From: Rebecca billardiae RCC1528
Lineage: Eukaryota; Protista; Haptophyta
Assembly (NCBI GenBank): GCA_965240325.2
Contig: OZ251248.1
Coordinates: 62,001-126,000, forward strand
Direction of reading: 5' to 3'
DNA: 64,000 nucleotides
Shown: one piece after another, positions 9,164-42,056 of the stretch
How the letters are laid out: each line of letters starts with the position of its first letter
Position numbering within the stretch: position 1 is the stretch's first letter
Position numbers and translations under genes: made by a program
Notes under the pieces: generated by a model
The model's database searches: none
What the model was told of the DNA's origin: nothing
Seen by the model: the letters and a program-made list of their open reading frames with translations, nothing else

Positions 9164-9477
9164 ATGGCGCCCCCTGGCGCCGCGCTCCCCCCACTCCCCG
9201 TGCCCCCCGCGCCGGCGCCGCCCGCGGCCGACGGCGGCGGCCGCGCGCGCGACGGCGGCGCGGGCGGCGCCGAGCCGCAGCAGCAGCAGCTGCGCGCCGC
9301 CGGCTCGACGCCGCACATCCGCTCGGCGCGCGAGGCGCGCACGGCGCCGCTGGAGGGCGAGCGGCCGGACGCCCGGCCCTCCTCCGCCCCGCGCCGCGGC
9401 TCGAGCACCCAGCTCCCAACCCTCGGCGCCGCGGCCGACGGCGGCGGCGCCAAGCCGCCGCCGCCGCGGCCGGCGTG

Positions 9478-9516
<39 letters not shown>

Positions 9517-11912
9517 GCTCGGCGCGCCCGGCCGCAGCGTGCGCGCGCCGCTGCTCGTGCCCCCCGGTGGCCGCGCCGCCGCCGGCGGCGCGTCGCTGTC
9601 GCTCGGCGTCGGCGGCGTCGACGGCGGCGGCGCGTGCGGCGGCGGCCATGCTGGTTGGGGCGGCGCGGGCGCGCAGCCGCAGCCGCTGCAGCACGCGGCG
9701 GGCTCGCCGTCGAGCGTGCGGCTGGACGCGCGCGAGCGCGCGCTGCTCGAGCTGCTCTCGGGCCCGTGCGCGATGCCGCTCCACGTCCTCGAGACCGCCG
9801 TCAGCTCGGACGCTCACCAGCTCGGCCTCGTGCGAGCGTTTGTGAGCGCAAAGCCGCCGCCGCCGCCGGCGGGAACGGCGGCGGCGGCCGTCTCGGCGGG
9901 CGGCGGCGGTGGTGATGGGGGCGGCGGTGGCGGTGCCGCGCCGTGCCGCGTGCTGCTCCTCTACCGCTCGGCCGAGCGCGACGCGTCGGGCCTGCTGCGC
10001 GAGCGCGCCCTCGTCTCGCGCCCCGGCGGCGCCGTGCCGTCGGCGTTTGCATCGGAGCTGGTCGCACTGGTCGTGCGCGTCACGCCGGCGGAGCAGCAGG
10101 CGGCGCAGGGGCTGCCGCCGCCGGCGGGCGGGGCGTGCGGCTCGCTCGGCGGCGGCGGCGGCGGCGGCCTCGGCGGCGCCACCGCCGGCGGCTCGACCGC
10201 GCTCGTGCTGAGCGCGCCCGGCGGCGGCGGCGCGGCCGCGGGCGGCGCGCTCGCGCCTTACGGCGTGGGCGCGGGCGGCGCGTCCGCGGCGGCGGGCGGG
10301 CTGGGCGGGCTGGGCGTGCTGGCGTCCGCGGCGTTCGCGGACGAGCGCGCCGACGCGCCGATCCCCAGCGCGCGCGACGTGCGCCACTGCGTCTCCATCG
10401 CCGTGCTCGCCGCGGGGCGCGCGGCGCTGCCGTCGCCGCGCGCCGACGCGGGCCTCGCGCCGCGCGGCCGCGGCGGCGGCGGCGCGGCCGGCGGCGGCGG
10501 CGCGGCGGGCGGGCTGGGCGGCGGCGCGGGGTTCCCCGTGCTCGGCGCCGAGTCGCCGCTCGCGCAGCCCCTCGCCGCGGCGCAGGCGCTCCTCTCGCAG
10601 CTCTACCTGCCCCTCCTCGGCGCGATGCTCCGCACGGCCAACCGCGCGGCCGCGCAGCACCCGACGCGGCGCGCGGCCGCGGCGCTCGCCGACGGCGGCG
10701 GCGGCGGCGGCGGCGTCGGCGGCGGCGGCGCGCGGCTGCTGCGCGGGCCGGAGGGCGGCGGCGGCGAGGGCGGCGCGCCGGTGCTCGCGCGGTACGACGG
10801 CGGCGGCGCCGGCGCCGGCTCCGCCGGCCGCGCCGTCCGCGCCGCGCAGCGCGCCGCCGCCAAGCAGGCCGAGGCGGCCGCGCGCATCGCCGACGCGCTG
10901 CTCGCACTGCGGCAGCAGCTTGTGCGCGCAGCCGAGAAGCTGAGCGAGGCGTCGGACTGCATGACGCTGACGTTCCACCTGCACGCGCCCGAGATGGACG
11001 GCGTGCCGCTCGCCGACTTCCCCGCGCACGTCCTCGCCGAGGCGCTCGGCCCGCCGCCGCCGCTCTCGCCGCGCGCCGGCGGCGGCGGCGGCGGCGCGTG
11101 CGGAGCGTTCGCTCTGGTCTCGGCGGTCGCGGCGTCCGTCGGCCCCGCCGGCTCGCCCTCGGGTGCGGAGGGCGGCGAGGAGGCGGGGCTGGAGGCGGAG
11201 GGGTCGGGCGTCGGCCCGTCCGCCTCCGCGCTCGGCGGCGCGCCCTCTGCGCAGCCCTCCGCCCTCTCCGACGCGCCCTCCGCCTCCGCCGCCGCCGCGG
11301 GCCCGCAGCCGTCCGCGCTCGCGCGGCTGCCGTCATGCTGCGCGTCCGCGTGCGGCGGCCATGCTGACGGCTCGGTGGCGACGGCGCACACGGCGAACTC
11401 GGGCGGCGGCGGCGGCGGTGGTGGCGGCGGTGGCGGCGGCGGCGGCGCGCGCGCCGCGCCGCCCGTCTCCGCGCGCGAGCTCCTCGCCCGCCTCGACGGC
11501 CCCGACGACTTTGCGATGGCGGCCGACGCGCCGCGCATCGGCGACTACTGCGCGCGCGTGCTCGGCGCGTGGCTGCACGAGCTGCGCGGCGCGCTCGAGC
11601 TCGGCGGCGCGAGCGGCGCGGCGATCGTGGCGCAGCCGCCGCCGCCGTCGCCGCCGGCCGCGGCCACGCGCACCGACTCGCCCGGCGGCGCCGCCGTCGC
11701 CGCGGCCGCGGCCGCGGCCGCGGCCGCGGCCGGCGGCGCGCGCGCGCCGCGCCCAAGCCTCCGGCTGAGCACCGCGGCGGGCGGCGGCGGGCCGGCGGCG
11801 GGGAGCGCCGCGCCCTCGCCCGCGCCGTCGCGCACCGTGTCGGCGGGCGCGGCGGTGGCGGCGCGCCGCTTCTCCGTCGAGTCGGCGGGCGCGTTTGGCG
11901 TCGCGCACACGC

Positions 11913-11950
<38 letters not shown>

Positions 11951-12150
11951 GCGTCCGGCGGCGGCGCCGGCCCCACGCAGATCCGCGTGCACCCGGTCGC
12001 GGAGGGCGACGAGGAGGAGGAGGGCGGCGGCGTCGGCGGCGTCGGCGTGGGCGTGGGTCCGGGCGTGGCGGGCGAGGAGGAGGACGACGCGGCGAGCGGC
12101 TCCGCGGGCGGCGCGGGCTCGGCCGGCGCGGGCTCGGCGCACGCGGACGA

Positions 12151-12188
<38 letters not shown>

Positions 12189-14999
12189 GCGGCGGCGGCG
12201 AGGGCGGCGAGGGCGAGGAGGCGGACGGCGACGACGACGACGACGACGACGATGGCGGCGGCGGCGTCGACGCGCGCGCGGCCGACGCGGACGGCGCGGG
12301 CGCGGATGGCGGCGTGGCGCCGGGCGGCGGCTCGATGCGGCGGCGGGTGCGGCGCCGGCCCCGCGCCGACGGCGGCGGCTCGGACGCGAGCAGCTCGGCC
12401 GGCGGCGGCAGCAGCTTTGCGCGCACGCCGCGCGGCGGCGGCGGCGTCGGCGTCGGCGTCGGCGGCGTCGGCGGCGGCGTGGGCGGCGGTAGTGGCGGCG
12501 CCGACGCGCTCGGCGCGGCGCGCGGCGCGGCGGCCGCGGCCGCTGCGGCGATGGCGGAGGCGGGCCTCGCGGCGGACGGCGCGGATGATGGCGAGGACGA
12601 GCGGTTCGCAGAGCCGGCGGGGTACGCGGCGGAGGCGGCCGACGCCGACGCCGGCCCGCTCGTCGAGCTGGAGTACTGGCGGCGGCGGATGGGCGCGATG
12701 CTGCAGATCGAGCAGCAGCTGCGCTCGCGCGAGGCGGTCGCCATCGTCGGCGTCGTGCTGCACTCGGGCCGCCGCTTCCGCGAGCTCGCGCGCCGGTGGC
12801 AGGACCTCGTGTTCGGCGTGACGGACGCGGCGAACGAGGCGAAGGACAACGTCAAGTACCTCACGCTGCTCGAGCCGCAGCTGCGCGCGCTGTACGGCGG
12901 CTCGCTCGGCGCGATGGCCGAGGCGGTCGCGCCCCTCACCGAGCAGCTCAAGCTGGTCGGCACCGTGTCGCGCCACTACAACACGACGGAGCGGCTGGCC
13001 AACCTGCTGCACCGCGTGGTGCACCAGACGGTGCGCAACATGCGCGCGTGCCTCGAGCCCGCCGGCGGCCCCGCGCTGCTCCGGCAGCACCCCGCGCCCG
13101 CGCTCGAGCGGCTCTCGGAGGCGCAGGCGCTGTGCCGCTCGCTCGAGGCGGCGGTGCGCCGGCTCGCGGCCGAGCTGCCCGCCGGCCGGCTGGGCGGCGG
13201 CGAGCTCGACGCGCTGCTCGCGCCGCTCGAGATCTTCGCGCACCGGCTGGAGCAGCTGGGCACGGTGCTCTCCACGTGCCTCCAGTTCGCCGAGCTCGGC
13301 ACGATGCGCGTCGACGGCCTCGCCGAGCTCGCCGCGCTCTTCCGCGCGGCGCTGCGCGTGCTGCACGGCCGGCACGCGGCGGTGCTCGACACGTCCAACG
13401 CGCGCTTCGAGATCGACTTTTACCACTTTTTGGTGGTGGTGCGCAACCTGGAGAGCACGCTGCAGTCGTACATCAACGCGCGGTTCGACAACACGCGCAA
13501 CACCGAGGCCGCGCTCCAGCTGCTCTCGCAGTTCTCCGGCCTGCTGCGCGCGGGCGTCGTGCGCGACGACCTCTCGTCCAAGCTGGCGGTGATCTTCTCG
13601 GCGTACGCGCTCGACCTCGAGGACGTGCAGGCGCTGTACGAGGCGCACAAGGGGCGGCCGCCGTGCCCGCGCGGCTTCCCGCCCGTCGCGGGGCGCGTCG
13701 TGTGGGCGCGCCAGCTCCTCCGCCGCATCGAGCAGCCCATGCGCTACTTTGGCGCGCACGAGGCGCTGATGCGCGCGCCCGACTCGCGCAAGATTGTAAG
13801 GCAGTACAACCGGGTCGCGCGCGTGCTCGTGCAGTTCGAGGGGCTGTGGGTGGGCGCGTGGGCGCGCGGCGTGCCCGCGGTGCGCCGCGCGCTCGACGCG
13901 ACGCTGCTCGTGCGCGACCCGTCCGACGGGTCGCTCCACGTCAACCTCGACCCGGCGGTGCCGCAGCTGCTCGCCGAGGCGCGCCACCTGCTGCGGCTGG
14001 GCGAGGCCGTGCCGGCAGACGCGCTCACGCTGCTGCACGCGGCGCCGCGGCTGCGCGCGCACGCGAACGCGCTGGCGCACGCGCTGGGCGTGCGCGCGCG
14101 GCTGGGCTCGGCGCTGCCCGCCGAGCTGCGCCCGCTCCTCAAGCCGCACGTCGACGCCGTCGACGCCGTCCTCGCCGAGGGCACGGTCGCGCACACGTGG
14201 GCGGGCGCAGACACCTACTTCTTCCTGAGCGGCCTCGGCGGCGCGCTCGCCGACCTCGAGACGCTCGTGGGCAAGGTGAAGGCGGTGGCGGAGGTGCAGC
14301 TGCACCGCTCGCTGCGCAGCATGGCCGCCGCGCAGCTCGTCTCGCTGCCGTCCGAGGGCACCGTCGCGCTCGCCGAGTTTGTCGCCGTGCAGGTGAGCGC
14401 GGCGCCGTGTTGTCTCGTGTGTGTGCGTGGAGTGTGCGCGCGTGCGTGTGCGCGCGTGTTGTCTCGTGTGTGCGCGTCGAGTGTGCACGCGTGTGGAGTG
14501 TGCGCGCGTGCGTGTGCGCGCGCGTTGTCGTCTTTGAGCGTTGAGCGTGCGCGTGTGCGTGTTTGTGTGTGTGCGTGCCAGTGCGCGCGCGCGGCGGCGA
14601 GCGCGCACGTGCGCGCGGGCTGCGCGGCTCACGCGGCGCGCGCGCGCGCGCACCCGCCCGCCCGCCGCAGCGCGAGTCGTGCGCGCGCGCGGCCGCGCTG
14701 CTCGACGCCAAGTCGGAGGAGGCGGAGCGCGCGGTCAACCTGCTCTTCGAGATGGCGGCGGAGGCGCCGCTCGGCGGGCGGCGCGTGCCGGTCGAGCCGG
14801 GCGCGATGGCGGCCGTGCGGCGGCACTACGCCGAGCTGTGCGAGCACGCGGTGCTGAGCGCGGTGCGCGCCGCGCTCAAGGCGCTGCACGAGCGGCTCAC
14901 CGTGCGCGGCGGCGCGGCGCGGCTCGGCGCCGTCGGCGGCGGCGGCGGCGCGCTCGTCGGCGCTGGCGGCGGCGGCGGCGGCGGTGCCGCCGCCGCGGC

Positions 15000-15032
<33 letters not shown>

Positions 15033-18000
15033 GCGCGGCGGCGGCGCGGCCAAGCCGGGCGGCGGCGGCGGCGCGCGCGCGCCGCCGCCCGGCGCGGCCG
15101 CGCCGTCCGCGCCCGCGGCGCACGCGCGCGCGCTCGCGCCGCCCGCGCCCACACCCGCCCAATCGGCACCCGCCGGCGTCGCCGGCCGGTCCGGCGCGGT
15201 CGGCCCGCCGATGCCGCCCGTCGGCGGCTTCCTGTGGACGCAGCGGCCGTTTTTCGAGGTGCACGTCGAGCTGAGCGTGCCCGCCGTCTCCATCGTGCCG
15301 TCGGTGGACGCGGTGCAGGGTGCGGTGAACGGCGCGGCGCGCGAGGTGCTCGGCGTCGCGCGCGCGCTGCAGCCGTGGAGCTGGCCCGAGTCGATCGCCG
15401 AGCAGCTGCAGGCGGCGGACGCGGCGCACGCGCGGCTGGACGCGTCCGCGGCCGCCGCGCGCGCGCACTCCATACTCGCCCCGTCGGGCGGCGGCGGCGG
15501 CGGCGGCGAGGAGGAGGGCGCGCTCCATCACTCATCGGAGTACGGTGGCGGCGGCGGCGGGCTTGGCGCGGCCTCGCCGCTCGCGCGCACGCCCGCGCGC
15601 TCGCCGATGCGCTCGCCGTCCGCGCGCGGCGGCGGGCTGGGCGCGCACTGGGGCTCTGCCTCGGAGCGCGGCGGCGGCGGCGACGACGGCGGCGGCGGCG
15701 GCGGCGTTCTGCTCAGCCGCGCGGAGCGGCAGCGCCTGCAGCAGGCCGTGGCCGACGGCGCGTTCATCCGGTGCGCGCGCGCGCGCCGAGATCGCAACCT
15801 CGCGCCCGCGCGCGCCGACGCGACCGCCGCCGCCGCGCGCCCGACTGAGCGCGCGCGCCCACGCGCCGCCGCCGCCCGCCGCGCGCGCGCGCGCGGCGCA
15901 GGCGCGCGCGGCAGCTCTTCGACGCGGCGGCGCACGCCGAGGCCGCGGCGCGCGCGTCCGCCGCCGCGCCCGCGCCCGCCGAGCCCGCCGGCGGCTCGGC
16001 GGCGGCGCGCCCGCCGGCGGCGCGCGCGCGCGCGCCCGCCGGCCGCGAGATTGCAATCTCGCGGCAGAACTCGCCGCCCGCGCTCGCGGTCGTGGTGCCG
16101 GGGCGCGAGATTGCAATCTCGAAGGAGTCGATGCGCGCGACGCTGCTCGCCGAGCTGCTCCACGGCGTGCCCGGCCACGGCGGCGGCGCGCACCCCGCGC
16201 ACGCGCACGGCCACGCGCACGGCCACGGCGGCGGCGCGGGCGGCGCCGACTGGCTGCGCGATGAGTCGGGCGGGCCCTCGGCCGGCGGCGGCGGCGGTGG
16301 TGGCGGTGGCGGCGGCGGCGCGGCCGCGCCGCGCTCGCCCGCGCCGGCGCGCAGCCCGCGCCCGTCGGGCAGCTTCAGCGCGGCGCGGCGCGCGCCGTCG
16401 CCCGCCGCCGCCGCCGCCGCGGCCGCGGCCGCCGGCGCCAAGCCCGCCCACGCGGCGCGCGCGCTCGGCGGCGCGGCCGCGGCGGGCGCGGGCGCGGGCG
16501 CGCAGCAGCAGCAGCAGCAGCAGCAGGCGCAGCAGCAGGCGCAGGCGAGCGCGTCCGCCGCGGTGGCGCGCGAGCGCGCGGCGGCGGTCGCGGCGATCGA
16601 GCGGCGGCTCGGCGCGGCACTCGCGCGCTCGGACCGCGACCACTCGGGCGACGTGACCTTTGCCGAGTTCCTCGCCACGTGCAAGCGGCTCTCGCGCCGC
16701 GCGTCCTTCTCGATGCTGCCGCGCGTCGGCTCGGACATGTCGGTTGTGGTGGCGGTGCTGCGGCTGGCGGGCGGGCTGCACGGTCTCAAGCTGGCGGTGG
16801 ACGCGCACACGGCCACGTTCGCAGACTTCTCGCACCTGTGGACCGCGTCGGTGCGCGAGGAGGTGGGAGCATTCGTCGCGGGCTCGCCGCGCCCCGAGTC
16901 GTTCGTCGCGCAGCTCGACGGCTACGGCGGGCTGGACGCGCGGATCGCGCGGCTGGCGCCCGTGCACACGGCGGGGCCCTTGTCCCTCAACGCGACCCAC
17001 CTCAAGGTGGCGCTGCGCGCGGAGTGCGCGGCGTGGCGCGCGGCGTACGCGGCGGAGCTGCACGCCATCGCCAAGGCGCGGCTCGAGACGCGCCTCGCGC
17101 ACTTTGCCGAGTGCCGCCGCCACCTCGGCCGCGAGATTGGCCACCTGCTGCTCGCCGCCGAGGCGGGCGGCTCGGGCGGCGCGGCGGCGGGGCAGCCCGC
17201 GGCCGACGAGGCGGGCGGCGGCGGCGGCAGCGGCGGCGGCGGCGGGCTGCTGGGCACGTCGCTGCTGTCGGAGGTGCGCGCGCTGCTGCACGCGGTGCGC
17301 ACGATGCACGCGGCGGACGAGGCCGTCGACCACGACGTCTCGCGCCTCGAGGAGCTGTACGGCCACCTCGCGCGCCACGCGGGCGCGGCGGACGTGCCGC
17401 GCGCCGAGCTGGACGCGGTCGACGAGCTGCGGCATGAGTGGCGTGTGCTGCGCGCGCGCGCGGATGAGCGCTCGGCGGAGATGTCGGGGCTGCAGGAGCG
17501 GCTGCACGCGCAGCTGCTCGGCGCGCTGCGCACGTTCACGGCCGAGCTGCGCGCGCTCGGCGCCGAGTTCGACGCCGCCGGGCCCATGTCCGCGGGCATC
17601 TCGCAGGGTGAGGCGCGCGCGCGCCTCTCGCGGTTTGCTGCGTCCGCGGACAACAGGGCGCTGCAGCTGCGCGAGCTGAACGTGGGCGAGGCGCTGTTCG
17701 GGCTGCAGCCCACGTCGGCGCTCGAGCTGGGCGAGATCCAGCGGCAGTGCGCGCTGTGCGAGCGCGTCCTCGGCCTCGAGGCCGAGCTCGAGCGCACCGT
17801 CGTCCGCCACCTCGACGCGCCATGGGCGCAGGCGGCCGAGCGGCTGTCCGACGGCGCGTTTGGGAACGCGGTCGCGTCGATCGCCGGCCTCGCCGCCAAG
17901 CTGCCGCCCGAGGCGCGGCGCGCGCCGGCGTCGGCGCGGCTGCGGCGCACGCTCGAGGCGATGCGCTCGGTCGTGCCGCTGCTGCAGGCCCTCGCGCACC

Positions 18001-18273
18001 CCGCCATGCGCCCGCGCCACTGGGAGGCGCTCTCGCAGCTGTGCGGCCTGCCAGAGCCGCTGCGGCCGCGCGAGCCGTCGCTCACGGCGCGCGCGCTGCT
18101 CGACGCGGGCGTGCGCCTCCGCTCGGCGGAGGTGCTCGCGCTGTGCCACACGGCGCGCGAGGAGGCGGCGCTCGAGGCGCGGCTCGACTCGACCGTCTCC
18201 GACTGGTGGTCCGCCTCGCTCGCCCTCACGCACCCGTATGCGCCCGGCGGCGCGCCATCCGGCGGCGGCGCGG

Positions 18274-18314
<41 letters not shown>

Positions 18315-19737
18315 GACGGGCGCGCGCTGCTCGACCTCGACGCGGCGCTGGAGCAGCGCGCGCGGATCGACGACGCGCTGGCCGAGCTCGCGTCGATCAC
18401 CGCCTCGCGCTACGGCGAGCCCTTCGCCGCGCGCTGCGCCGACGCGATGGCGCGGCTCGGCGCGGTCGGCGAGCTGCTCGACGCGTTCACGCGCGCGCAG
18501 CGCGCCTACGTGCGGCTGGCGCCGCTGTTCAGCGCGGCAGACGTGGCGCGCTCGCTGCCGCGGCAGGCGAAGGTGTTCGAGGCGGCGGAGCGCGGGTGGG
18601 ACAAGCTGCTCCGCCGCGCGGCCGACTCGCCCGCGCTCGTCTCCCTCGCCGACGCCGACTCCGCGCTGCTCCACGCCATCGAGCACGTGCTCGCGCAGCT
18701 CGAGTCGTGCGCGCGCGCACTGTCCGCGTACCTGCACGCCAAGCGGCGGGTGTTCCCAAGGCTCGGGCTGGTGGGCGACGCGGCGCTGCTCGAGCTGCTC
18801 TCGCAGGCGGGCGCGCAGCCCGCGGCGGTGCTCGGGCCGCAGATGCCCGCGCTCTTCGACGCGGCGACGCGGCTGCTCCTCGTCGACGACTCGAGCGCGC
18901 TCGCGCCCACCACCGCCGCGGCCGGCGGCGGCGGCGGCGGCGGCGCGGAGGGCTCGGCAGAGGAGCGTGCGGCGGCGGCCGCCGCGACCGCCGCGCGGCG
19001 CGTGCGCTCGCACGCCGCGGGCGGCGGCGGCGGCGGCGGCGCGCGAATCGGCGGCGGCGGCGGGCCGGGCGGCGGCTCGCACAAGCCGCCGCCCCTCTGG
19101 CGCATCGTCGGCCTCGCCGACGCGGCGGGCGAAGTGCTCGCGCTCGCGCCGCCCGCGCTCACCATGGCCGCGGGCGCGCGCGGTCGCGCGGCCGCGGCCG
19201 CGGCGGCGCACGCCGACGGCGGCGGCGCGGCGGCGCACGCGGCGGGGGCGGGCCCGCCCTCCGCCGCGCAGCCCGCGCCGCCCGCCGCGCTCCCGTCCAT
19301 CGGCGACGCCACCGTCGCCGTGACGGTCGCTGAGGTGGACGCTGAGTGCGCGGAGCACGGCGCGCGCGTCGCGCCGCCCGGCGCGCCCGGCTCGGGCGGC
19401 GCGCGCGCGCAGGCGCTGGCCGCGCTGGGCGCGGCGGCGGGCGGCGGGCTGGGCGGCGCGGGCGCGCTCACCGCCGCGGGCGCGACCACGCGCGAGGTGG
19501 GCATCGAGGTGGCCGGCCCCGTCGAGGGCTGGCTCGCGCGCGCGCTGCACCTCGCGCGCTGCGTGCTGCGCGCGCACTGCCGCGCGGCCGCGGCGGACGC
19601 GCTCGACGGGCTCGGCGTCGCCGCGTCGACGCCCGAGGCGCTGGCGGAGCCGCACGTGCCCGCGCAGGCGGCGGCGCTGTGCCTCGCGCTGCGCTTCGAC
19701 GCGGAGGTCACCGACGCGCTCGGCGCGATGGCGGCGA

Positions 19738-19768
<31 letters not shown>

Positions 19769-20143
19769 GGGCGGCGGCGCGGCGCCGCTGCTCGCGGTCG
19801 GCCGCCGGCTGCGCGCGCGGATCGCGCGCGTCGCCGACGCGACGCTGGGCGCGCACGCGCACGCCGCGGCGTCGGAGGCGCGGCGCGGCGGCGGTCCCGC
19901 GGCGCCCGGCGCGCCCTCCGCGCTCGCGTGGGCGCGGCTGCAGGGGCTCTGCCTCGAGCTGATCCGGCAGCGCGACGCGCACGCCGCGCTCCTCGACGCG
20001 CGCGCCGCCTCGGCCTCCGACTGGGCGTGGGCGGGGCAGCTGCGCCCCGCCTTCTCGACGAGCGCGCCCTCGCCCGGGTACGGGCACCAGCACATCAGCA
20101 CAGGCGGCGGCGGTGGCGGCGGTGCGGGCGGCGGCGGCGGCGG

Positions 20144-30238: not shown

Positions 30239-31094
30239 CGGCGCCGCCGCCGCGGGCCCGGCCGCGGCCGCCGCGGCCGCCGCCGCGGCGGCGGCGGCCG
30301 CCGCCGCGTCGGCCGCCTCGTCCGTCGGCGTGCGCCGCGCGTCGCTCGGCGACGAGCTCAACGCGTATGGCCGGCCGCCCGCGGGGCACGGCGCGGGCGG
30401 CGGCGGCGCGGACGGCGGCGGCGCCGACGGCGGCGGCGGCGAGGGCGGCGGCGGCGGCGCGTCCGCCGCCGCGGCCGCGGTCGGCGCGGCGCCCGCCGAC
30501 GCGCGGCTGCTCGCCGCGGCCGCGCGGCGCGTGCGCCGCCACGTCCGCCTCGTCGTGATGCTCGCGCCCTCGCCGCCCGACGGCGCGCTCGCGCGCGCCG
30601 CGTCGGCGGCGGGCGTCGGCGGCGGCGGCGGCGGCATCGAGGCGCTGTTCGCGTCTGAGCGTGCGCTTCTGCACTACCTCACGCCGCTCGCGCTGCCGCC
30701 GTGGCCGGCGTCGGCGCTGCGCGGGCTCGCGCTCGGCGCCGTCTCGGACGCGGACGCGTCCGCCGCCGCGCTCGCCCTCGCGCCGCCGCACCACCTCGAC
30801 CCGGAGGGCTTTGTCGAGTCGGCGCCGCTCGGCTCTGGAGGGTACGGCGTCGCGGCGGCGCTCGCGGCGCGCGGCGGCGCGCACGGCGCCGCCGCGGCCG
30901 CGGCCGCGGCGGAGGCGGAGGGCGAGGGCGAGGCGGAGGGCGGCTCGCTCGCGCCGCTGCGCGCCGCGCCCACCTCCGCGCGCCCGCAGTCCGCGCTCTC
31001 CACCGGCACCGCCTCGTCGGGCGCGGACGATTTGGCGCTGGCGGCGCTGAGCTGCGCGCTGTCGTCCGCATCCGCCGCGTCCGCGGCCGCGCCG

Positions 31095-31132
<38 letters not shown>

Positions 31133-33828
31133 GCGCACGTCGGTGAGCGCCGCCGTCGTCGCCGCGGCGGGCTCGGCGGCGGGAGGCGCCGACGCCGTCG
31201 ACGCCGCCGTCGCCGAGGCCGCGCTCGCGGACGCGCGCGCCGCCGCGGCCGCCGCCGCCGCCGCCGCCGCGGACGACGACGGCGGCTCCGAGCTGCACGC
31301 TCGCGTCGCGTCGGCGCTGGCGGACTGCCACCTGGCGGCGCTGCGGCTGCGCGCGCGCGAGCTCGCCGCGGCGTGCGCCGCCGACGGCGGCGCGCTCGCG
31401 CCGCCGCTCCTCGTCTCGCCCGCGCGCCTCCTCGCCGCCGCGCGCGCGTACGCAACGCTGCAGCGCGCGGCGGACGCGCGGCTCGGCGGCGCGGAGGACG
31501 CGATCGGTGGCGCTCTCTCCAAGCTGGCGAGCGCGGAGGAGGACGTGGGCGCGCTCGCGGAGGCGGTGTCGGCGCAGAAGGCGGCGCTCGAGCGCTCGGG
31601 CGAGGAGCTCGCCGACATGCTCCGCCTCATCACCCTCACCACCACCGAGTCTGCGCGGCGCAAGGGCGCGCTCGCCGTCTCGCAGAAGGCCCTCGGGGAG
31701 CGCACGCGCCGGCTGGCAGAGCTCGAGCGCCAGCGCTCGCACGCGCTCGGGGACGCGCTCGCGCTGATGACGGTGGCGGACGAGGCGGTGCTCAACGTCG
31801 CGCCCAAGGACCTCGCGTGGCTCCGCGCGCTCAAGAGCCCGCCCGAGGCCGTCAAGCTCGCGCTCGAGGCCGTGCTCCTCGTCCTCAGAGAGCCAGCCGC
31901 CGAGATTGGGCTGCGCGAGCGCGAGCCGACGCGCGCCGAGGCCATCTCGATGCGGCAGGCGGCGGCGCGGACGGGCGTGGAGCAGCGCAACCCGCTGGTG
32001 ATCAACGTGTCGTGGGCGCACCTCAGCGCCGCGCTGCTCGAGCCCGCCGCCGCCGCCGCCGCCGCGCTCGAGGAGGGCGGCGGCGGCGGCGGCCGCGGCG
32101 GCGGCCGCGCCGCCGGCGGCGGCGGCGCGGCGGCCTCGGCGGACGGCGGCGGCGCGCAGCCGCCGCCGCCGCCGCCGCCGCCGGCGGAGGGCGGCGGCGG
32201 GCAGGCGGCGGCGGCGGAGGGCCCGGCGCTGTTCACGCAGCGGCTGTGGGCGCTGGACAAGGACGCGATCTCCGCCGAGACGCTCGAGCTCCTCCAGCCG
32301 TACCTCCGCCACCCGGACTTCAACCTCGCCGCAGCCAAGCGCGCGGCGCCCGCGATCGGGGCTGTCGTCGGCTGGCTGCAAGCGCTCGAGACTTTCCACG
32401 GCGCGGCGGCGCGCGCGCGGCCGCTGCTCGCGGAGGTGGCGCGCGCGCGGCGCGAGCTGGGCGCGCACGAGCGGCACCTCGCGGCGGTGGGCGCGCGCGG
32501 CGGCGCGGCCGACGAGCTCGAGCACATGCAGCGCCGCTTCGAGGCCGCGACCGCGGCGCGCACCGCACTCACCACAGAGCAGCGCGCCGCGGCGGACAAG
32601 CTGACGACGGCGCGCGCGCTCGTGTCCGCGCTCGCCGCCGAGCGGCCGCACTGGCAGGCGGCGCGCGCGGCGGCGGCGGCGGAGCGCGGCGCGCTGCAGG
32701 CGGACTGCGCGTACACCGCGGCCGCGCTCACCTACGCCGCCGAGCTCCCGCCCGGCCGGCGCGCGCTGCTGCTGCCAGAGCTGCTGGGCGCGTGCGCGCG
32801 CGCCGGGCTTCAGCCGCGCCCGGCCGTGCGCGCGGCGCCGGCGCTGTTCGGCGCGACGCCGATCGAGCGGGTGCGCTGGGCGGAGGCGGGGCTGGTGGAC
32901 GCGGACGGCGACGGCGGGCTCTCCGCGCTCGCGCTGCGCCACGCCTCCGGCTGGCCGCTCCTCCTCGACCCGCACGGCCTCGGCCTCCGCTGGGTGTGCG
33001 CGACGCACGCGTCGGCGCACCGGCACGCGGCGAGCGTGGGCGCGGCCGCGCCCGGCGGCGGCGCGGCCGGCGGCCGGCGCGCGTCGAGCGCGGCGGGCGG
33101 CGCGCGCGACGGCGGCGGCGGGCCGGCCGCGCGCGCCGCCGCCGCCGCCGCCGCAGCCGCCGCCGCCGCAGCCGCGCGGCCCGGCGGCGCCGCGCGCGTG
33201 TACGGCTCCGCCGCGCGCGGCGGCGGCGGCGGCGGCGGCGGCGCGCCGCCCGGCGGCGCGGCCGCGCCGCCGGGCGGCGCGCCGCACGCGTCCGCGGCGA
33301 GCGGCGCGGCGGCGGCGGCGGCGGCGGCGGCGTGGTGGGCGCCCGCGCTGGGCGCGCCGAGCGCGCGCGCGCGCGGCTACGTGCTCGTCCCCGCCGCCGC
33401 GCCCGACGCCGTCCTCGAGCGCGCGCTGCGCGTCGCGGCGGGCGTCGGCGTCGCGCTCATCGTGCACGGCTTCGAAGGAGGGGCGTTGCCGCGGCCGCTG
33501 CGCGCGGTGCTCGGCGCGGCGGCGCGCGCGCGGCACCTCGCGGTGCGCGCGGCGGGCGCGGCGCGCGCCGCGGCGCACGCCGCGCGCACCGACGCCGCCG
33601 CCGCCGCCGCCGCGGGCCACGCCGCGCTCGTGGGCGGCGGCTCGGCCGCTGACCGCTGGCTCCCCATCTCGGCTTCGGCCGATACGGCCGCGGCCGCCGC
33701 CGCCGACGCGGACGGCGGCGGCGCGTTGGGCGGCGGCGGCGCGGACGGCGGCGGGGCCGCCGGCGGCGGTGGAGGCCCCGGCGCCAGGCCCGACGGCGCG
33801 ACCGCGTCGGGCGGCGGCGGCGGCGCGG

Positions 33829-33872
<44 letters not shown>

Positions 33873-34038
33873 TCGGACGGCGCCGACCCGGCCGGCGCGC
33901 CGCTCACGGAGGCGGACCGCCCGCCCGCCGCGCTGCGCGGGCTCAGCCGGCGGCGGCACTCGTTCGCGCTCGCGGCGGCGGCCGCCGCCGCCAGCGCCGC
34001 CGCCGCGGACGACGGCGGCGCCGGCTCGTTCGACGGGC

Positions 34039-34094
<56 letters not shown>

Positions 34095-35647
34095 AGCGGC
34101 TCGCGCGTGCGCGTCGCCCTCGCCGCGTCCGCCGCGGCGGAGGCGGAGCTGGGCCCGCCGGCGAACGGCGCGGCGCAGCCGCACCTCGCGGGCGCGGCGG
34201 CGCCGCAGCCGTCCGACTCGGACGACGCGCGCGTGCTCGAGATTGACGTCTCGCGCGGCTTCTTCTTCTACCTCGTCACCGGCCGCGCGCGCGGCGCGTC
34301 GGCTGCGCTGGGCGCGGGCGACGCGGTGGCGATGGCGGAGGGCACGGCGGCCGCGCCGCGCGCCGCCGCCGCCGCGCCGCTGTGCGCGCCGCCGCCGTGC
34401 GCGCTGTGCGAGTGGAGCCAGATGCGGCTCACGCCGCTCTCCTTCTCCCCCTCCGGCGCCGCGCTCGCCGACGCGCTCCTCGCACCCATCCTAGCCGTCG
34501 AGCGGCCTTCGCTGCTCGCGCAGACGCTCACCCTGCGCGCCGACGTCGCGCGCGCCGACGCGCAGATCGCCGCGTGCGAGCGCGCGCTGCTCGGCTCGCT
34601 CGCGTCGGCGCGCGGGCGCGTGCTCTCGGACATGTCGGCGCTCGCGTCGCTCGGCTCGCAGCGCGCAGCGATCGCCACCGCCGTCGCGCGCCGCGAGCTC
34701 CGCTCCGACATTGTATCGCGGCTCGAGCGCGGCACCGCTGACTGGGCCCGCGTGTCGGCGCACGGCGCGCTGCTGCTCGTCGCAGCGAGCGACCTCGCGC
34801 GGCGGCTGCCGCACGCGGCGGGCGCGGCGAGCCTGCGCTCGCTCGAGGCGGTGCTCGCGCGCTCCGCCGTGAGCGCGCGCCACCACCGCCTCGCCGACGT
34901 GCGCGCCGCGCAGCTCTGCGTCGAGCTGACCGCCCGGTGGCGCGCGGCCGTGAGCCGCTCGCTGCGCTCGGCCGAGGAGGAAGCGCTTTGGGACCTGCTG
35001 CTCGCGGCGCGGCTGGACGAGGCGCGCTCCGGGCTGCCCGCGCTCGCGGCGGTGCTCGGCGCGTCGCACTCGCTGCCGCGCGCCTCCGTCTTCGCCGACG
35101 CGGCCGTGCCGCCCGCGCCGCCGCCGAGCGCGGCCGCGGGCGGCGGCGGCGCCGACGGCGGCGGCGCCGACGGCGGCGCCGACAAGGGCGGCGGCGGCGA
35201 GAAGGGAGGAGGCAAGGGCGGCGGCGGCGGCGGCGGCTCGGGCGCGGCGGCGGCGGCGGCGGCCGCGCCGCCCGCGCAGCCCGCGCACCTCACCACCGCG
35301 ATGGGCGCGGGCCTCCCCGGCGGTTACATCACGGCGGCCACGCTGCTCGGCGCGCCGGGCGAGCGCGGCGGCGCGCCGCACGGCGCGTGGCGGTGCGGCG
35401 CGGGCGCGGGCGGCGCGGTCTCGGACCCGTTCCTCGCCGCGTCCGCCGCGGCGGCGGGCGCGCGCCGCGCCGCGCGCGGCTCGGACGCCGGGCCCGCCGC
35501 CGCCGCCGCCGCCGCCGGGCTGAGCGGCTCCCCCGCGTCCGTCGACCGGCGGTTTGCGGCCGCGGCCGCCGCCTCGCCGCTCGGCTCGCCCGCGCGCGGC
35601 GCGCTCGGCGGCGGCGCGGGCGCGGCGCCAGAGCACGCGGGCTCGGC

Positions 35648-35678
<31 letters not shown>

Positions 35679-35998
35679 GGCTCGGGCGCGGCGCCCGCGT
35701 TCGTGCCGCCCGGCGGCTGGCCCGCGTGGCTCTCCGTGCGCGCCGTCGCCGAGGTCGTCGCGCTGCACGCGCTGCCGCCCGCCTTTGGTCTGCGCTTCCT
35801 TGCCGTGTCGCTCGCGTCCCCGCTGGCCGACACGCAGGCGGCGTGGCAGCGCTTCGTGGCGCTGGCGGAGCCCGAGCGCGCGGCGCACCCGCGGTTCGCG
35901 CGCGACGAGCTGCCCGCGCTCTCGCGGCTGCTGCTCGTGCGCGCGCTCCGCCCCGACCGCGCCGAGGCCGCCGCGCTGGTGTACGCTCAGGAGGTGCT

Positions 35999-36061
<63 letters not shown>

Positions 36062-36209
36062 AGCGCCCGCCGCGCTCGGCGCCGCGCCGCCCGCCGCCGT
36101 CGGCGCGGGTGCGCTCGTCACGCCCGGCGCGGCCGGCGGCGGCGCGCGCCTCGGCGGCGGCGGCGCGGGCGGGCTGCCCGCCGGCGGCATCGGCGCGCTC
36201 GGCGCCGCC

Positions 36210-36243
<34 letters not shown>

Positions 36244-36920
36244 GGCTGCGCGACCGGCTGCGCGCCGCCGCGCTCGACGGCGCCGCGCACACCCCCATAC
36301 TCGTGCTGGCAGACTCGCCGCCGCCGGGCGGCGGCGGCGTGCTGCCGCCGGCGCCGCCGGACTACTCGCCCCCCGGCCTCGCGGCGGACGCGATCGCCGC
36401 GCTCGGCGCCTCCACCGCGTGCCTGCGCGAGGAGGAGGACACAGCGGCCATCCACCCGACGTTTGGCGCGCCGCACGTGCGCCTGCGGCTCGGGCGCGAG
36501 GCGGCGGGCGGCGCGCTCGGCCGGCCCGGCGCCGACGACGACGGCGGCGGCGGGGGCAGCCTGGTCGGCCGCGGCGGCGGCGGCGCCGTCGGCGGCGTGG
36601 TCGGCGTGCACTCGCGCCACGCCGCCACGGGCGGCGGGCGCACCGACGCGGACGACGAGCCCGACGCGCCGCCGGGCGGCGCCCCGCCGGTGTCGCGCGT
36701 CGCGCTCGGCCCGCCCGGCGCGCGCGTGCGCGCGCTCGGCGCGCTGCGCGCGGCGCTCGCGCGCGGCGAGTGGCTGATCGTCGAGGGGGTGGGCGCGGAC
36801 CCGGCGGGCGCGTGGGCGCTCGCGTGCGTCGCGCTGCCCGCGCTGCTCGACACGCCGCCGCCGCTGCCCGCCGGCGGCGGCGGCGGCGGCGCGGACGGCG
36901 GCGGCGGCGGCGGCTCCGCG

Positions 36921-36960
<40 letters not shown>

Positions 36961-36986
36961 CCGCGGGTGCGCACGACGCGGAGCAC

Positions 36987-37026
<40 letters not shown>

Positions 37027-38899
37027 GCAGCGCGGCCGAGCTCGTGCCCGCGCTGTACCACGCCGTCGCGCCCTCGCCGCGCTTCCGCCTCTTCCTCGTC
37101 GCCGACGGCGGCGACTGCGGCACGGGCGAGGCGGCCTCCGAGTATGTCGCCGCCGAGGGCGGCGCGGACGGCGGCGCGGCGCACGACGGCTCGCAGCTCG
37201 CCGACGCGGACGCGGAGGCGGCGGGCCGGGCGGGCGGCTCGGCGCGGCGCTCGGCGAACGGGCGCTGGTGGCGCGAGCTCTCGCGCACCTGCGCCACCCT
37301 CGCCGTCCGCCCCGCCGCGTCCGCGCGCGAGCTTCTGCTCGAGGCCGCGGAGGCCGTGCGGGCAGAAATCGGCCCTTCCATCGCTGCGGACCTGCAGCCG
37401 CCTGACTGGCAGCTGCTGCGCGCGGTGGCGCAGCTGCACGCGGCGATCCGCGCGCGGTGCGCGCGGCGGCACAGCGCGCGGCACGCGCCCGTCAACGGCC
37501 ACGCCTGCCTCCCCGGCCGCTCCGAGCTCCTCCTCGCAGTCAGGGAGGCGCTGCTTGTGGCGGACGAGCGCGCGCCCGGCGCGCCGATGCCGTGGCCGCG
37601 TGTGTACTGGGGCGTGCTCGGCGTGGCGTATGCGCCGTTCTGCGGGGCGGACGCGGCGGAGTGGGGCGCGTGGCTGCAGCTCGCGCGGCGGCTGCTGCCC
37701 GACATGCGCGCCACGTACGCGCCGCGCCGCGTGTACGCCCTCGCCGGGCCCGTCGGCGCCGCCCACGAGTCGGCGCTCGCGGCGTCGCCCTCCGCCGCCG
37801 CCGCCGCCGCCGCCGCCGCAGAGGACGGAGGGATCGTGCTGACGGGCGGCGCGGGCGCGGGCGCGGAGGGCGAGGGCGGCGGGGCGGGCGAGGGCGGCGG
37901 CGGCGCGGGCGGCGCCGCCGCCGCGTCCGCGTCCGCCGCGTCCGCCGCCACCGCCGCCACCGCCGCCGCCACCGCCACCGCGCGCGGACCAAAAGGCAGC
38001 AGGTCGGCGCGCGCCGCCGCCGCGTCCGCGTCCGCGTCGGCCACGTCGGCCGCGGCCGAGCGCGCGCACCACGCGGCGCACGCGGGCGGCGAGTCGCGCG
38101 CGGCGGAGCGGCAGCAGAGCGCCGCCGCCGCCGCCGCCGCCGCCGCGTCCGCCGCCGCCGCCGCCGCCGCCGCGTCGGCCGCGGCCGCGCCGGGCGGCGG
38201 CGGTCTCGTCGGTGGCGGCTCGGCGCGCGGCGGCGGCGCGGGCTCGCGCGGCGGCGGCGGCGCGGCGGCGCAGGCCGGGCCCGCGCCGGGCGAGCCGAGC
38301 GGCGGCGAGGGCGTGTACCGCGCGCCCGGCGACGACGACGCCACCGCGCTCGTCCTCGCCAAGCCCTCCGCCGCGGGCGGCGCGGGCGCGCGCGGCGGCG
38401 GCGCGGGCGGCGGCGCGCACCGCACCGCCGGCGGCTACGGCGCGGGCACCTGGGGTGCCTACGCGACGCCGTCGGTGGCGTTCGGCCCGCGCGGCGGCGC
38501 GGGCGCGTTCGAGCTGGGCGCGAGCCTCGCGCCCGCCCTCGCCGCGCTGCTCGGCGCGGGCGAGCGCGGCTGGGCGCGCCACGCGCTCGCCACGCTGCCC
38601 GCGCGCGACGGGCGCGGTCTGAGCGGCCTCGGCGCGACGGTGGAGGGCTTGGCCGCGGACGCGGGCGCGCGCGCGCTGCTCGTCGGGTGCGCGGCGGTGG
38701 CGGCGGCGGTGCTGGCGCACGCGCGCGAGCACGCGGTCGCGCCGCGCGCGCGCACCGCGCCGCCGCTGCTGCTGCTCGGCGGCGGCAGCGCCGCCGGCGC
38801 GGGCGGCGACGCGGCCGGCGGCGCGGGCGGCGGCGGGTTTGACGGCGGCGCGGCCGGCGGCGGCGCGGCCGGCGGCGGCGGGCCGGCCGGCGGCGGCGC

Positions 38900-38963
<64 letters not shown>

Positions 38964-39188
38964 GCCGTGCGCCGCACCGCCACCAACGCCGCGCGCGCCA
39001 ACCCCGGCGCCGCCGACCTCGACGGCGGCGGCGCGGGCGGCACGGCGCGCGCGCTCGGCGGCGCCGCGTCGCGCGGCGCCCCGCCCGGCCCAGTGCCGCC
39101 TGGCGCGCCGGGCGGGCGGATGCGCGGCTGCCGCGCGAGCGGCGCGGCGTCGGGCGCGGGCGGCGGCGCGTGCGGCGCGGCCGCCGCG

Positions 39189-39220
<32 letters not shown>

Positions 39221-42056
39221 CGCCGCCACCGCCGCGAGCGCGCCGCTCCCGCCGCCGTCGATGCGCACGCCGACGGTGGGCGCGCGCGCGTGCGCGCGCG
39301 CGGCAGAGGTGCTTGATGCGCTGTCGTTGCGCGGGCGCATCCCGCCGCCGACGGCGCCGTCGGCGCAGAGCGCGGGCGGCGCGGCGCCCGCCGAGCCGTA
39401 CGCGCTGTGCGGCGGGCTGCTCCGCCTGCTCGCGGACGCGAGCGCGCGCCGCCGCTCGGCGGGCGCGCCGCCGACCGCGTACGACAGGCTGCTCCACGCC
39501 GAGGTGCGGCCGCGCGCGGCGCGCGGCGAGCGGCGCGCGGCGCGCGGCGCGCGCACGCGGCGGCCGGCCGCACGCGCGCGCGCGGCCGCACGCTCACCCG
39601 TACCCCTCCGCCCCGTGGCGCGCGCGCAGGTGCTCTCGGCGCACGCGGTGCTGTGCGGCGTGCACGCCGCGCTGCGGCCGCTCGCCCTCGTGCAGGCGGC
39701 GGCGGGCCCGCGCGCCGCCGCGCCGTCCGCGCGCGCCGGCGGCGGCGCGGGCGCGCCGGCCGCGGGCGCGCCGGGCGGCGCCGCCGGCGCGGCGAGCCCG
39801 CTGCCCGCCGCGGCGACCGCCGTGCTCACGCTCGCGACGCTGGGCACGGCGTACGAGCGCACGCTGCCCCCGCCGCCGCCGGGCGTGCGCCTCTCCTCCG
39901 CCGAGGAGGCCACCGCCACCGTCACCGCCCTCGCCGAGGGCTCGGTGCCCGCCTCGTGGCGAAAGCGCATGTGGGGCGTGCCGTGCGCGTTCGCGCCGCC
40001 CGAGCCCACCGCGCTCTCGGCGGCGGCGGCGCCGCCGCCGAGCGGCGCGGCGGCGCCGACGGCGGTGAGCGCGGCGGTGGAGGCGGACTCGGCGCTGGGC
40101 CACTGGCTGCTCGCCACCACGCGGCAGCTCGAGCAGGTGCGTGCGCTGCGCGTGCGCTGCGCGTGCGCCGTGCCTGCGCCCTGCGCTGCGCGTGCGCGCG
40201 CCGTGCGTGCGCTGTGTGTGCGCGCGCTGTGCACTGCGCCGTGCGTGCGCTGCGCGTGTGCCGTGCGCTGCGCCGTGCGCGCGCTGCGCGTGCGCTGAGC
40301 GCGCGCGCGAGCCGCCGCGTAGCCGAGGCGCACCGCCGGCGCGCCGCTCACCGCACGGTGCCGCCGCGCACCGCACCGCGCGCGCGCGCGCGCAGCTCGT
40401 CGTGTGGATCCAAGCGTGGGGCGGGCTCCTCGAGGGGCGCAGGCGGCGCGCGCCCGCGCCGCTGCCGCGGCTGCTGTGGCTGGGCGGGCTGCGCCACCCG
40501 CGCGCGCTGCTGGCCGCCCTGCACCAGCACGCGGCGGCGACGCACGGCTGGGCGCTGGGGTCTCTCGTGAGCTCGGCGCGGGTGTTGCCTGTCAGCGCGC
40601 GCCAGCTGCGCGCGTACGGCGGGTATCAGCCGCTCGGCGGCGGCGGCGGCGGCGCGGGCGCGGCCGCCGCGCCGCGCGCGGGCGCGGCCGGTGGCGCGGC
40701 GGGCGGCGCGGACGGCGGCGGCGCGGGCCACGCGGCCGCGCAGGGCGGCGGCGCGGGCTCGCGCGCGGACGCCGAGCGCGCGCCGCCGGTCGCGGGCTGC
40801 GGCGCGAGCGGCGGCGCCGGCTCGAGCGGCGGCGCCGGCGGCGCGGGCTCGGGCTCGGGCGGGCACGGCGCGCGCTCGCGCGGCGGCGGCGGGCGCGCGG
40901 CGGACCGGCGCGGCGGCGGCGCCACCGCCGCCGCCAGCGGCGGCGGCAGCGCGCGCGATGAGCTGATGTCAGGCCCCCACGCGTCGCACGGCGCGGCGGC
41001 GGCGCAGCCGGGCGGCGCGAGCGCAGGTGGCGGCGCGGACGCCGACGCGCCGCGCGGCGCCTCGCTCGCCGACGGCGCGGGCGCCCACGACGCGCACGGA
41101 CCCGAGCCGCCCTCGCCCGGCGGCGGCGGCGGCGCGGCGGCGGCCATTGTCGATCTGGAGTCGCCCGGACACGGTGCGTGGCGTGGCGCGCGGCGGCGGC
41201 GGCCGTGCGCGCGCGGACGGCGGCTGCCCGGGTCGAGCCGCGCATGTGGCCCCGCGCCCCTGCCCGCCCCTGCGCCCTCACCGCCCGTCCTCCTCCTCTG
41301 CCACGGCTACTACCCCTGCGCCCACCGCACGCCCCTGCGCGCGCAGGTGTGTACGTGTACGGCATCCGGCTGGCGGGCGCGCTCTGGCAGGCGACGCCGC
41401 CCGCGAGCGCGGCCGTGGCGCACCACGGCGGCGGCGCGCTCGCCGTCGGCGGCGGCGACGGCGGCACGGCGCTCGTGCAGCCCGGCCGGCACGCGCCTCC
41501 GGCCGGTGGCGCACCCGGCGGCGCGACGGGCGGCGGCGCCGGCGGCGGCGCGCCGCTCGCCGCCGCCGCCACCGCGCAGTTCAAGCCCCACGTTCTCGAG
41601 TCGGGGCTGCACGCGGGCGTGCCGGCGCCGGACGGCGAGCTGCCCGTGCTGTGGCTGGGCGCGGTGCCGCGCTCCTCGCTGCCGCCGCCGCCGCCGCCGC
41701 TCGGCGCGAGCGCCGCCGCGGCGGGCCCGGCGGCGGCCATGTCCCTCGGCGGCGTGGAGGCCTACAACGGCGGCGCCGCCGCCGCCGACGCGGCCGCGGC
41801 CGACGCGGCGGGCGGCGGCGGCGCGAGCATCACGGCGGTGCGGTACGAGCCGCCCGCCGCGTCGCTCGGCACGCACGGCGGCGTGCAGGCGCGCGACGCG
41901 CCGCTGCGCACGCACCCCGTCCCGGTCTACTCCGCGGCGGGGCGGCCCGACGTCGAGCCCGTGCTCACGATCAGCCTGCCCGTGCGCCGCGCGGCCGAGC
42001 TCACCGCGTGGGAGCTGCGCGCGCTCGGCGCGCACTTTGCGCCGCACCAGGCGTAG
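9164..42056 (+). CDS. Giant axonemal dynein heavy chain-like protein (outer-arm gamma/DNAH5-8-like tail), ~10,641 aa. Exons 9164-14392, 14671-15770, 15902-39503, 39630-40136, 40396-41173, 41347-42056
   Basis: DHC_N1: GPLVELEYWRRR, VTDAANEAKDNVKYL, SRHYNTTERL, PPVAGRVVWARQL. Linker: AMRPRHW, YLHAKRRVFPRL. AAA2: GEAGSGKT, EWADG, WLVLDGP, LGNGDRL. AAA3: GAPGLGK, IDDL. AAA4: HALLL...SGRRSLARLAAF. Stalk/MTBD: LKSPPEAVKLALEAV, LQPYLRHPDF. AAA5: WPLLLDPHG. AAA6: GEWLIV, PRFRLFL. C-terminal: LWLGGLRHPRALL, GVYVYG. Five GT-AG introns keep the frame; total CDS is 31,926 nt. The start codon is uncertain. Confidence 0.9.
14393..14670 (+). repeat. Dynein intron 1 rich in (GT)n/(GC)n alternating purine-pyrimidine repeats
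   Basis: GTGAGC donor and CCGCAG acceptor. Internal reiterated GTGTTGTCTCGTGTGTG and GTGTGCGCGCGTGCGTGTGCGCGCG blocks. Confidence 0.75.
16632..16667 (+). other. EF-hand Ca2+-binding loop within the dynein tail
   Basis: DRDHSGDVTFAE matches D-x-D-x-S-G-x-V-x-x-x-E. It is followed by FL and preceded by a plausible helix (IERRLGAALARS). Confidence 0.7.

What the first reader, a model, noticed from the sequence alone, without database searches (positions are those of the whole stretch)
9164..42056. A ~10,600-aa dynein heavy chain, more than twice normal size, with a single 23.6-kb exon
Seen: all dynein modules occur in the correct order in one spliced frame of 31,926 nt, but nearly every loop is inflated by Gly/Ala/Pro low-complexity inserts. 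Known: dynein heavy chains are typically ~4,000-4,700 aa. Inference: an intact frame, canonical introns and retained motifs over 33 kb suggest a functional, hugely expanded paralogue rather than a pseudogene. The extreme GC content lowers the chance of stop codons, which weakens this argument.
Basis: partly seen in the sequence, partly recalled or inferred. Interest (0 to 1): 0.8.

Follow-up and report, generated by a model that had tools for sequence, protein, structure and literature searches.

The report
Giant dynein with a dead motor
A very GC-rich alga carries one real gene for a flagellar dynein of about 10,600 residues, over twice normal size because floppy Gly/Ala/Pro stretches pad its loops, and its main ATP-burning site is dead, so it is most likely a non-moving scaffold like the DNAHX dynein of animal sperm rather than a super-sized motor.

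Summary
The gene model is right: six exons, five GT-AG introns, 31,926 nt, 10,641 aa (about 1.0 MDa), one 23,602-nt exon. A codon/intron model finds no hidden intron in that exon (0 of 783 windows; all five real introns score as introns). 57% of residues lie in Gly/Ala/Pro/Ser-rich stretches against 0-3% in ten normal dyneins of this genome. The tail and stalk are outer-arm gamma type (DHC3, DNAH5/8), and it is the fourth gamma-type chain here. It is not a working motor: AAA1 has lost the Walker A Lys and Thr, the Walker B Asp, sensor I and the arginine finger. Stalk and microtubule-binding domain still fold. One orthologue fragment from a metagenome is 73% identical in the tail, so the tail is old and under purifying selection. 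It works like sea-urchin DNAHX (gamma-derived, insert-laden, dead AAA1, reported absent from protists), probably of separate origin, though a shared origin is not rejected. No RNA evidence could be obtained. The scan noted another dead, inflated dynein on other DNA of this genome. Verdict: new variant of a known kind.

The parts
9164..14392 (+). Exon 1 (1,743 codons): inflated N-terminus and DHC_N1 tail
   Evidence: the first 1,160 aa match the gamma N-terminus only weakly (6.8 bits, equal to the best shuffle), so the start codon is inferred
12644..14203 (+). DHC_N1 tail domain, outer-arm gamma type; best conserved part
   Evidence: Pfam 2e-112; best solved match Chlamydomonas gamma chain 7KZM_C; 73% to the orthologue fragment
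14671..15770 (+). Exon 2, tail
   Evidence: gamma profile runs unbroken across the exon 1/2 joint
15902..39503 (+). Exon 3, 23,602 nt: end of tail, linker, AAA1-6, stalk
16632..16670 (+). Single EF-hand-like loop inside a 400-aa tail insert
   Evidence: Pfam EF-hand_1 E 0.002 on the excised piece, below the curated cut-off; the only match to the EF-hand pattern in the protein, absent from the own gamma chains
17736..18887 (+). DHC_N2 / linker
   Evidence: Pfam 6e-52
20628..21056 (+). Dead AAA1 site: Walker A APVGVGRAS for GPAGTGKTE, Walker B LLVRE for CFDE, sensor I Asn replaced
22161..22760 (+). AAA2: Walker A intact (GEAGSGKT); arginine finger for AAA1 lost (LSG for VSR)
24105..24989 (+). 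AAA3 motifs: Walker A with Lys, Walker B DD, arginine finger RLTRH, spread by inserts
   Evidence: motif match only; no Pfam hit
29262..29288 (+). AAA4 P-loop remnant
   Evidence: Pfam AAA_8 E 0.009
31425..32642 (+). Stalk coiled coil and microtubule-binding domain, with a 60-aa Gly/Ala/Pro insert after helix 3 and a one-residue deletion in CC2
   Evidence: model pLDDT 81; fold matches dynein stalk structures 8I3J, 5AYH
32955..35021 (+). AAA5 and buttress, split by inserts
   Evidence: Pfam AAA_9 9e-8
39630..40136 (+). Exon 4, C-sequence
   Evidence: profile collinear across the exon 4/5 joint
40396..41173 (+). Exon 5, Dynein_C
   Evidence: Pfam 2e-4
41347..42056 (+). Exon 6, end of C-sequence and stop

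Best explanation
An expressed, catalytically dead dynein heavy chain that arose by an old duplication of the outer-arm gamma chain in this algal lineage (probably a haptophyte; inferred). Shown: gamma-type tail and stalk, dead AAA1, conserved tail in an orthologue, coding-type inserts. Inferred: the tail still dimerises with a beta-type chain and the intermediate/light chains, so the protein enters an outer-arm-like complex where it acts as a passive partner (assembly or transport scaffold, or a static brake), not as a motor. Once hydrolysis was lost, constraint on the ring relaxed and GC-rich triplet repeats expanded in the surface loops, which accounts for the doubling in size; most inserts are disordered filler.
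For: AAA1 motifs lost while 18 other own dyneins show the exact GPAGTGKT motif. Tail and stalk both match the Chlamydomonas gamma chain best. Identity to the own gamma chain falls from 34% in the tail to 24% in stalk and AAA5, whereas ordinary gamma chains are equally conserved in both. Orthologue fragment L046: 73% over 161 aa against 45-47% to own gamma chains, other intron positions, pair support 100; dN 0.24 with near-saturated synonymous sites, rough omega 0.1-0.3. Inserts have GC3 0.97 and the same codon bias as the core; no intron-like window. Inflation follows divergence across the family here: 0% low-complexity in canonical chains, 10-18% in two divergent ones, 48% in a second dead one. 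Precedent: DNAHX (PMC11785096).
Against: No transcript or peptide evidence. The orthologue fragment covers only the tail, so the dead motor and the giant size are seen in one genome only. Folding of a six-module ring carrying about 6,000 residues of inserts is untested. Partner chains and localisation are inferred from the tail type alone.
Confidence: 0.6

Rival explanations
1. Only the tail works. The motor half is a decaying passenger that stays in frame, like the motor-less gamma chain of the Chlamydomonas oda2-t mutant, or the whole gene died recently in this strain.
For: Conservation is concentrated in the tail; AAA3, AAA4 and AAA6 are nearly unrecognisable; oda2-t arms assemble without the gamma motor (PMC12338079).
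Against: 7,867 codons without a stop where 41 are expected; stalk length, microtubule-binding fold, AAA2 P-loop and the AAA3 arginine finger are kept despite a motor branch of about 4 changes per site; splice sites of the last three exons are intact. A dispensable motor half should have been truncated.
Confidence: 0.18
2. It is an orthologue of animal DNAHX (class 12), so that the non-motile gamma-derived family is far older than animals.
For: Same tail class, inserts and dead AAA1; the AU test does not reject a clade of this protein with DNAHX-like chains (p 0.29); a choanoflagellate chain groups with them.
Against: Best trees keep it apart from the DNAHX-like clade (support 100) and near haptophyte/green gamma chains; tail identity is 34% to the own gamma chain and 23-24% to DNAHX-like chains; the AAA1 lesions differ (DNAHX keeps the Lys and Walker B and traps ATP).
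Confidence: 0.1
3. The low-complexity blocks are unrecognised in-frame introns and the protein is about 4,500 aa.
For: One of the five real introns (39504-39629) is itself in frame and free of stops; no RNA data.
Against: 0 of 783 windows and 0 of 58 in-frame GT-AG candidates in exon 3 score as intron, while each real intron does in leave-one-out; the annotated frame is the best of six in 153 of 157 windows; inserts keep GC3 0.97 and codon bias.
Confidence: 0.06
4. It is an active giant motor with special mechanics.
For: All modules in order, stalk and microtubule-binding domain fold; AAA2 and AAA3 keep their Walker A Lys.
Against: AAA1, the site that drives the power stroke, lacks the Walker A Lys and Thr, the Walker B Asp, sensor I, a recognisable sensor II and the arginine finger.
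Confidence: 0.04

Closest known systems
DNAHX / dynein-X (Chai et al. 2025, PMC11785096); probably Kollmar's class 12
   Same: Derived from the DNAH5/8 (gamma) outer-arm chain, longer than normal through many disordered inserts, degenerate AAA1, predicted non-motile.
   Different: DNAHX is about 5,270 aa, reported only in animals and absent from protists, keeps the AAA1 Lys and Walker B and traps ATP, and has a kinked stalk. This protein is 10,641 aa, has lost the Lys and the Walker B Asp, keeps an unbroken stalk, and does not group with DNAHX-like chains in the best trees.
Outer-arm gamma heavy chain (Chlamydomonas DHC15/ODA2, human DNAH5/DNAH8; Kollmar class 3)
   Same: Tail and stalk match it best; same domain order; gamma-type flap in the microtubule-binding domain.
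   Different: 2.4 times longer, AAA1 dead, 57% low-complexity, an EF-hand-like loop in the tail.
DNHD1 (human orphan dynein)
   Same: Disordered inserts in the motor and an AAA1 without the catalytic Walker B residues; needed for cilia and sperm flagella (as summarised in PMC11785096).
   Different: Normal size; relationship not tested here; no sign of orthology.
Orphan dyneins of Kollmar 2016 (PMC5100056)
   Same: [quoted passage not shown]
   Different: No size or motif comparison with those 75 sequences was possible.
Pavlovales sp. CCMP2436 KAJ1621951.1 (P0024, 5,524 aa)
   Same: Divergent, mildly inflated gamma-type chain of a haptophyte; sister to this protein in the stalk/AAA5 tree (96).
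   Different: Keeps a working-looking AAA1; only 34% identical in the tail; the pairing may come from shared Ala/Gly bias.

Membership tests
Dynein heavy chain | Tail, linker, six AAA modules, stalk with microtubule-binding domain, C-sequence in order | tested here: met
   AAA3, AAA4 and AAA6 only as motifs or weak profile hits
Dynein heavy chain (motor-active) | AAA1 Walker A GPAGTGKT, Walker B DE, sensor I Asn, sensor II Arg, arginine finger from AAA2 | tested here: not met
Outer-arm gamma class (DHC3, DNAH5/8) | Tail groups with gamma chains | tested here: met
   inside the gamma side of the tree, support 100 against beta and I1 chains; best solved match 7KZM_C
Outer-arm gamma class (DHC3, DNAH5/8) | Motor domain groups with gamma chains | tested here: met
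   stalk and AAA5 tree separates it from beta, I1 and single-headed chains, on a very long branch
Outer-arm gamma class (DHC3, DNAH5/8) | Assembles in the outer arm with beta chain, IC/LC and LC1/LC4 | not testable with these tools
   needs proteomics or cryo-ET
DNAHX | Monophyly with DNAHX | tested here: inconclusive
   not in the best trees; not rejected by AU test, p 0.29. DNAHX-like reference chains were chosen by size, taxon and motif, not by an accession from the paper
DNAHX | Degenerate AAA1 | tested here: met
   degenerate, but at other positions than in DNAHX
DNAHX | Insertions in CC1 and CC2 that kink the stalk | tested here: not met
   CC1 aligns without gaps, CC2 has a one-residue deletion only
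DNAHX | Folded pre-sensor-II insert in the AAA4 small domain | not tested
   region too diverged and inflated to align
DNAHX | Occurs in animals with external fertilisation, absent from protists | tested here: not met
   host is a protist with three alpha-type and three beta-type outer-arm chains

The most novel reading that the evidence does not exclude
A haptophyte-wide, undescribed class of non-motile outer-arm dyneins, invented independently of DNAHX and DNHD1. Without the AAA1 Lys it cannot enter the ATP state, so with its intact stalk it would hold the neighbouring doublet in a rigor-like grip and act as a built-in brake or cross-link, perhaps tuned by calcium through the tail EF-hand; at 1 MDa it would be the largest dynein chain I could find.
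Probability: 0.2. Interest if true: 0.78.

Novelty: new variant of a known kind. Interest (0 to 1): 0.55.

Why it matters
Non-motile dyneins were described from animal sperm only in 2025 and reported absent from protists. A gamma-derived dead dynein in an alga, with a conserved orthologue, suggests that the outer-arm gamma chain has been turned into a pseudo-motor more than once, and gives a culturable single-celled system in which to ask what such chains do. It also shows how far a dynein fold tolerates padding (about 6,000 extra residues) once catalysis is lost. The size itself is mostly compositional bloat of a very GC-rich genome, which lowers its surprise.

Tried and rejected
One search went out in the same turn with a reference that spans that stretch, and (failed, timed out) used the same reference with a region outside it; later searches used references beside it. 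The joined spliced protein was not sent to any search tool; it was built only in local scripts and searches were made exon by exon. Idea that this is the gamma chain of a third outer-arm type (the genome has three alpha and three beta chains): weakened, because a further divergent gamma chain at C13:1640-1658 kb with a working-looking AAA1 fits that slot better. Raw NG86 dN/dS of 0.51 was rejected as inflated by GC3 saturation. Paper searches on dead or very long dyneins gave nothing beyond DNAHX. The bacterial promoter scan is not informative here.

Full report
Observation. The window is C32:62001-126000 of a 72-Mb, 41-contig genome and is 80-89% GC over most of the gene. Ala, Gly, Pro and Arg make up 60% of the chain. 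A profile of gamma chains runs collinearly across the exon 1/2 and 4/5 joints. The start codon is less sure: the first 1,160 aa resemble the gamma N-terminus no better than the best shuffle.

Is the long exon real? One true intron is in frame and free of stops, so hidden introns were a real risk. I trained a coding model on exon 1 and an intron model on the five introns. Each real intron scores as intron when left out of training; none of 783 windows of exon 3 and none of 58 in-frame GT-AG candidates does; the annotated frame is the best of six in 153 of 157 windows. The inserts have GC3 0.97 and the same synonymous codon bias as the conserved parts. Long exons are also the rule for this family here: about 20 other dynein genes lie in open frames of 3,900-5,200 codons.

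How unusual is the inflation? 6,078 residues (57%) lie in 30-aa windows with at least 70% Gly/Ala/Pro/Ser, against 0-3% in ten canonical dyneins of the same genome. There are 55 poly-Gly and 42 poly-Ala runs of six or more. Around AAA1, canonical own chains have 0%, two divergent chains 10% and 18%, and a second degenerate chain on C21 48%. Inflation therefore tracks loss of constraint in this genome. No longer dynein turned up among the hits of any search here (longest 6,060 aa), but these searches cannot prove a record.

What it is. Tail and stalk both match the Chlamydomonas outer-arm gamma chain best among solved structures, and the own gamma chains best within the genome. The genome holds three alpha-type, three beta-type and three other gamma-type chains (C8, C5 and a divergent one on C13), so a normal outer arm does not depend on this gene. 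In trees of 1,295 tail columns it is a long branch inside the gamma class, loosely near haptophyte and green gamma chains and apart from the DNAHX-like clade; forcing it together with that clade is not rejected (p 0.29). The host is probably a haptophyte of the Pavlovales type: high GC and few introns fit Diacronema (PMC8379373), and earlier scan notes say haptophyte, but I did not test this directly.

The motor is dead. AAA1 reads APVGVGRAS where 18 other own dyneins have GPAGTGKTE: the Lys and the Mg-binding Thr are gone. Walker B is LLVRE for CFDE, sensor I has lost its Asn, sensor II is unrecognisable and the arginine finger from AAA2 is Gly. From established dynein mechanics, AAA1 hydrolysis drives the power stroke, so no motility is expected. 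AAA2 keeps its Walker A and the AAA3 arginine finger that completes that site; AAA3 keeps a Lys and Walker B DD; AAA4 is a remnant. The stalk aligns without gaps in CC1 and with a one-residue deletion in CC2, and the microtubule-binding domain has a 60-aa insert after helix 3. A model of this part has mean pLDDT 81 and matches dynein stalk structures; the model leans on an alignment of normal dyneins, so it shows compatibility, not binding. Identity to the own gamma chain is 34% in the tail and 24% in stalk and AAA5, whereas ordinary gamma chains are equally conserved in both parts.

It is old and maintained. A search of 1.84 billion representatives with the DHC_N1 domain gave one orthologue, a 193-aa gene call on a 1,064-bp metagenome contig. 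After removing its two introns it is 73% identical over 161 aa, against 45-47% for either sequence to the own gamma chains, and the two form a pair with support 100 on a long stem. Its introns fall where this gene has none, and synonymous sites are close to saturation (80 identical codons of 114, 68 expected at saturation), giving a rough omega of 0.1-0.3. This covers the tail only.

How it most likely works. The conserved gamma tail suggests that it still pairs with a beta-type chain and the intermediate and light chains; Kollmar argues the same for divergent dyneins with ancient tails (PMC5100056). With no power stroke it would be a passive member of such a complex: an assembly or transport scaffold, as proposed for dynein-X, or a static link. 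Unlike DNAHX, which keeps the Lys and traps ATP in the pre-powerstroke state with a kinked stalk (PMC11785096), this chain probably cannot bind ATP at AAA1 and keeps a straight stalk, which from my knowledge of Walker A mutants would favour a rigor-like state; whether it still binds microtubules is open. A single EF-hand-like loop at 16632 sits in a 400-aa insert of the tail; gamma chains are regulated by calcium through LC4 bound to the tail (PMC4415241), so it may matter, but it is below the Pfam cut-off and unpaired.

Verdict. It works like DNAHX and DNHD1 but fails two of the DNAHX features tested and is not filed under it. New variant of a known kind, interest 0.55. The joined spliced protein was used only in local scripts; all database searches were made exon by exon by reference.

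Noticed in passing
L024 (G000:C21:119138-122347, minus strand): A second dynein-like gene with a degenerate AAA1 (P-loop GAAGCGKR, Walker B lost) and 48% low-complexity residues; probably the gene of scan notes s1-360780 and s1-360751.
   Followed up: partly
L020, L022, L023 (G000:C13:1640-1658 kb, minus strand): A third, divergent gamma-type heavy chain with introns, some inserts and a working-looking AAA1 (GPAGVGKT).
   Followed up: partly
L011-L016, L009-L010: The outer-arm set is triplicated with the same shape for alpha and beta chains: one recent pair plus an older third copy. With the C13 gamma chain this suggests a second, older outer-arm type.
   Followed up: partly
L018, L019 (C8:1030 kb; C17:577 kb): Two further divergent dyneins with 10-18% low-complexity inserts; L019 has AAA1 GVPGVGKT and Walker B DELHR.
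   Followed up: no
window 16632-16670: EF-hand-like loop inside the tail insert (scan note s1-341099); Pfam E 0.002, below cut-off.
   Followed up: yes
window 42310-44370: Split direct repeats just after the stop: 278 nt at 42310 and 43763, about 260 nt at 43476 and 44110, both essentially identical, with a 64-68-nt tandem array at 42732-43131; looks like a non-autonomous DIRS/TOC1-type element. No Pfam hit in its frame.
   Followed up: partly
window 3565-7023: Upstream gene ends in a FATC domain (Pfam 8e-6) with no kinase-domain hit, in line with the scan note of an ATM-like pseudokinase; it is also rich in Gly/Ala/Pro.
   Followed up: partly
L046:777-1022: An intron of the orthologue holds a run of CCCTAA telomere-like repeats and a short tandem repeat.
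   Followed up: no
P0106, P0104: A choanoflagellate chain (Salpingoeca infusionum, 5,517 aa) groups with the vertebrate DNAHX-like chains at support 100, which hints that DNAHX predates animals.
   Followed up: no
G000:C12:1357355, C12:1635967, C7:108536, C32:44107: Dynein stalk/MTBD matches outside dynein genes, as earlier scan reports describe.
   Followed up: no
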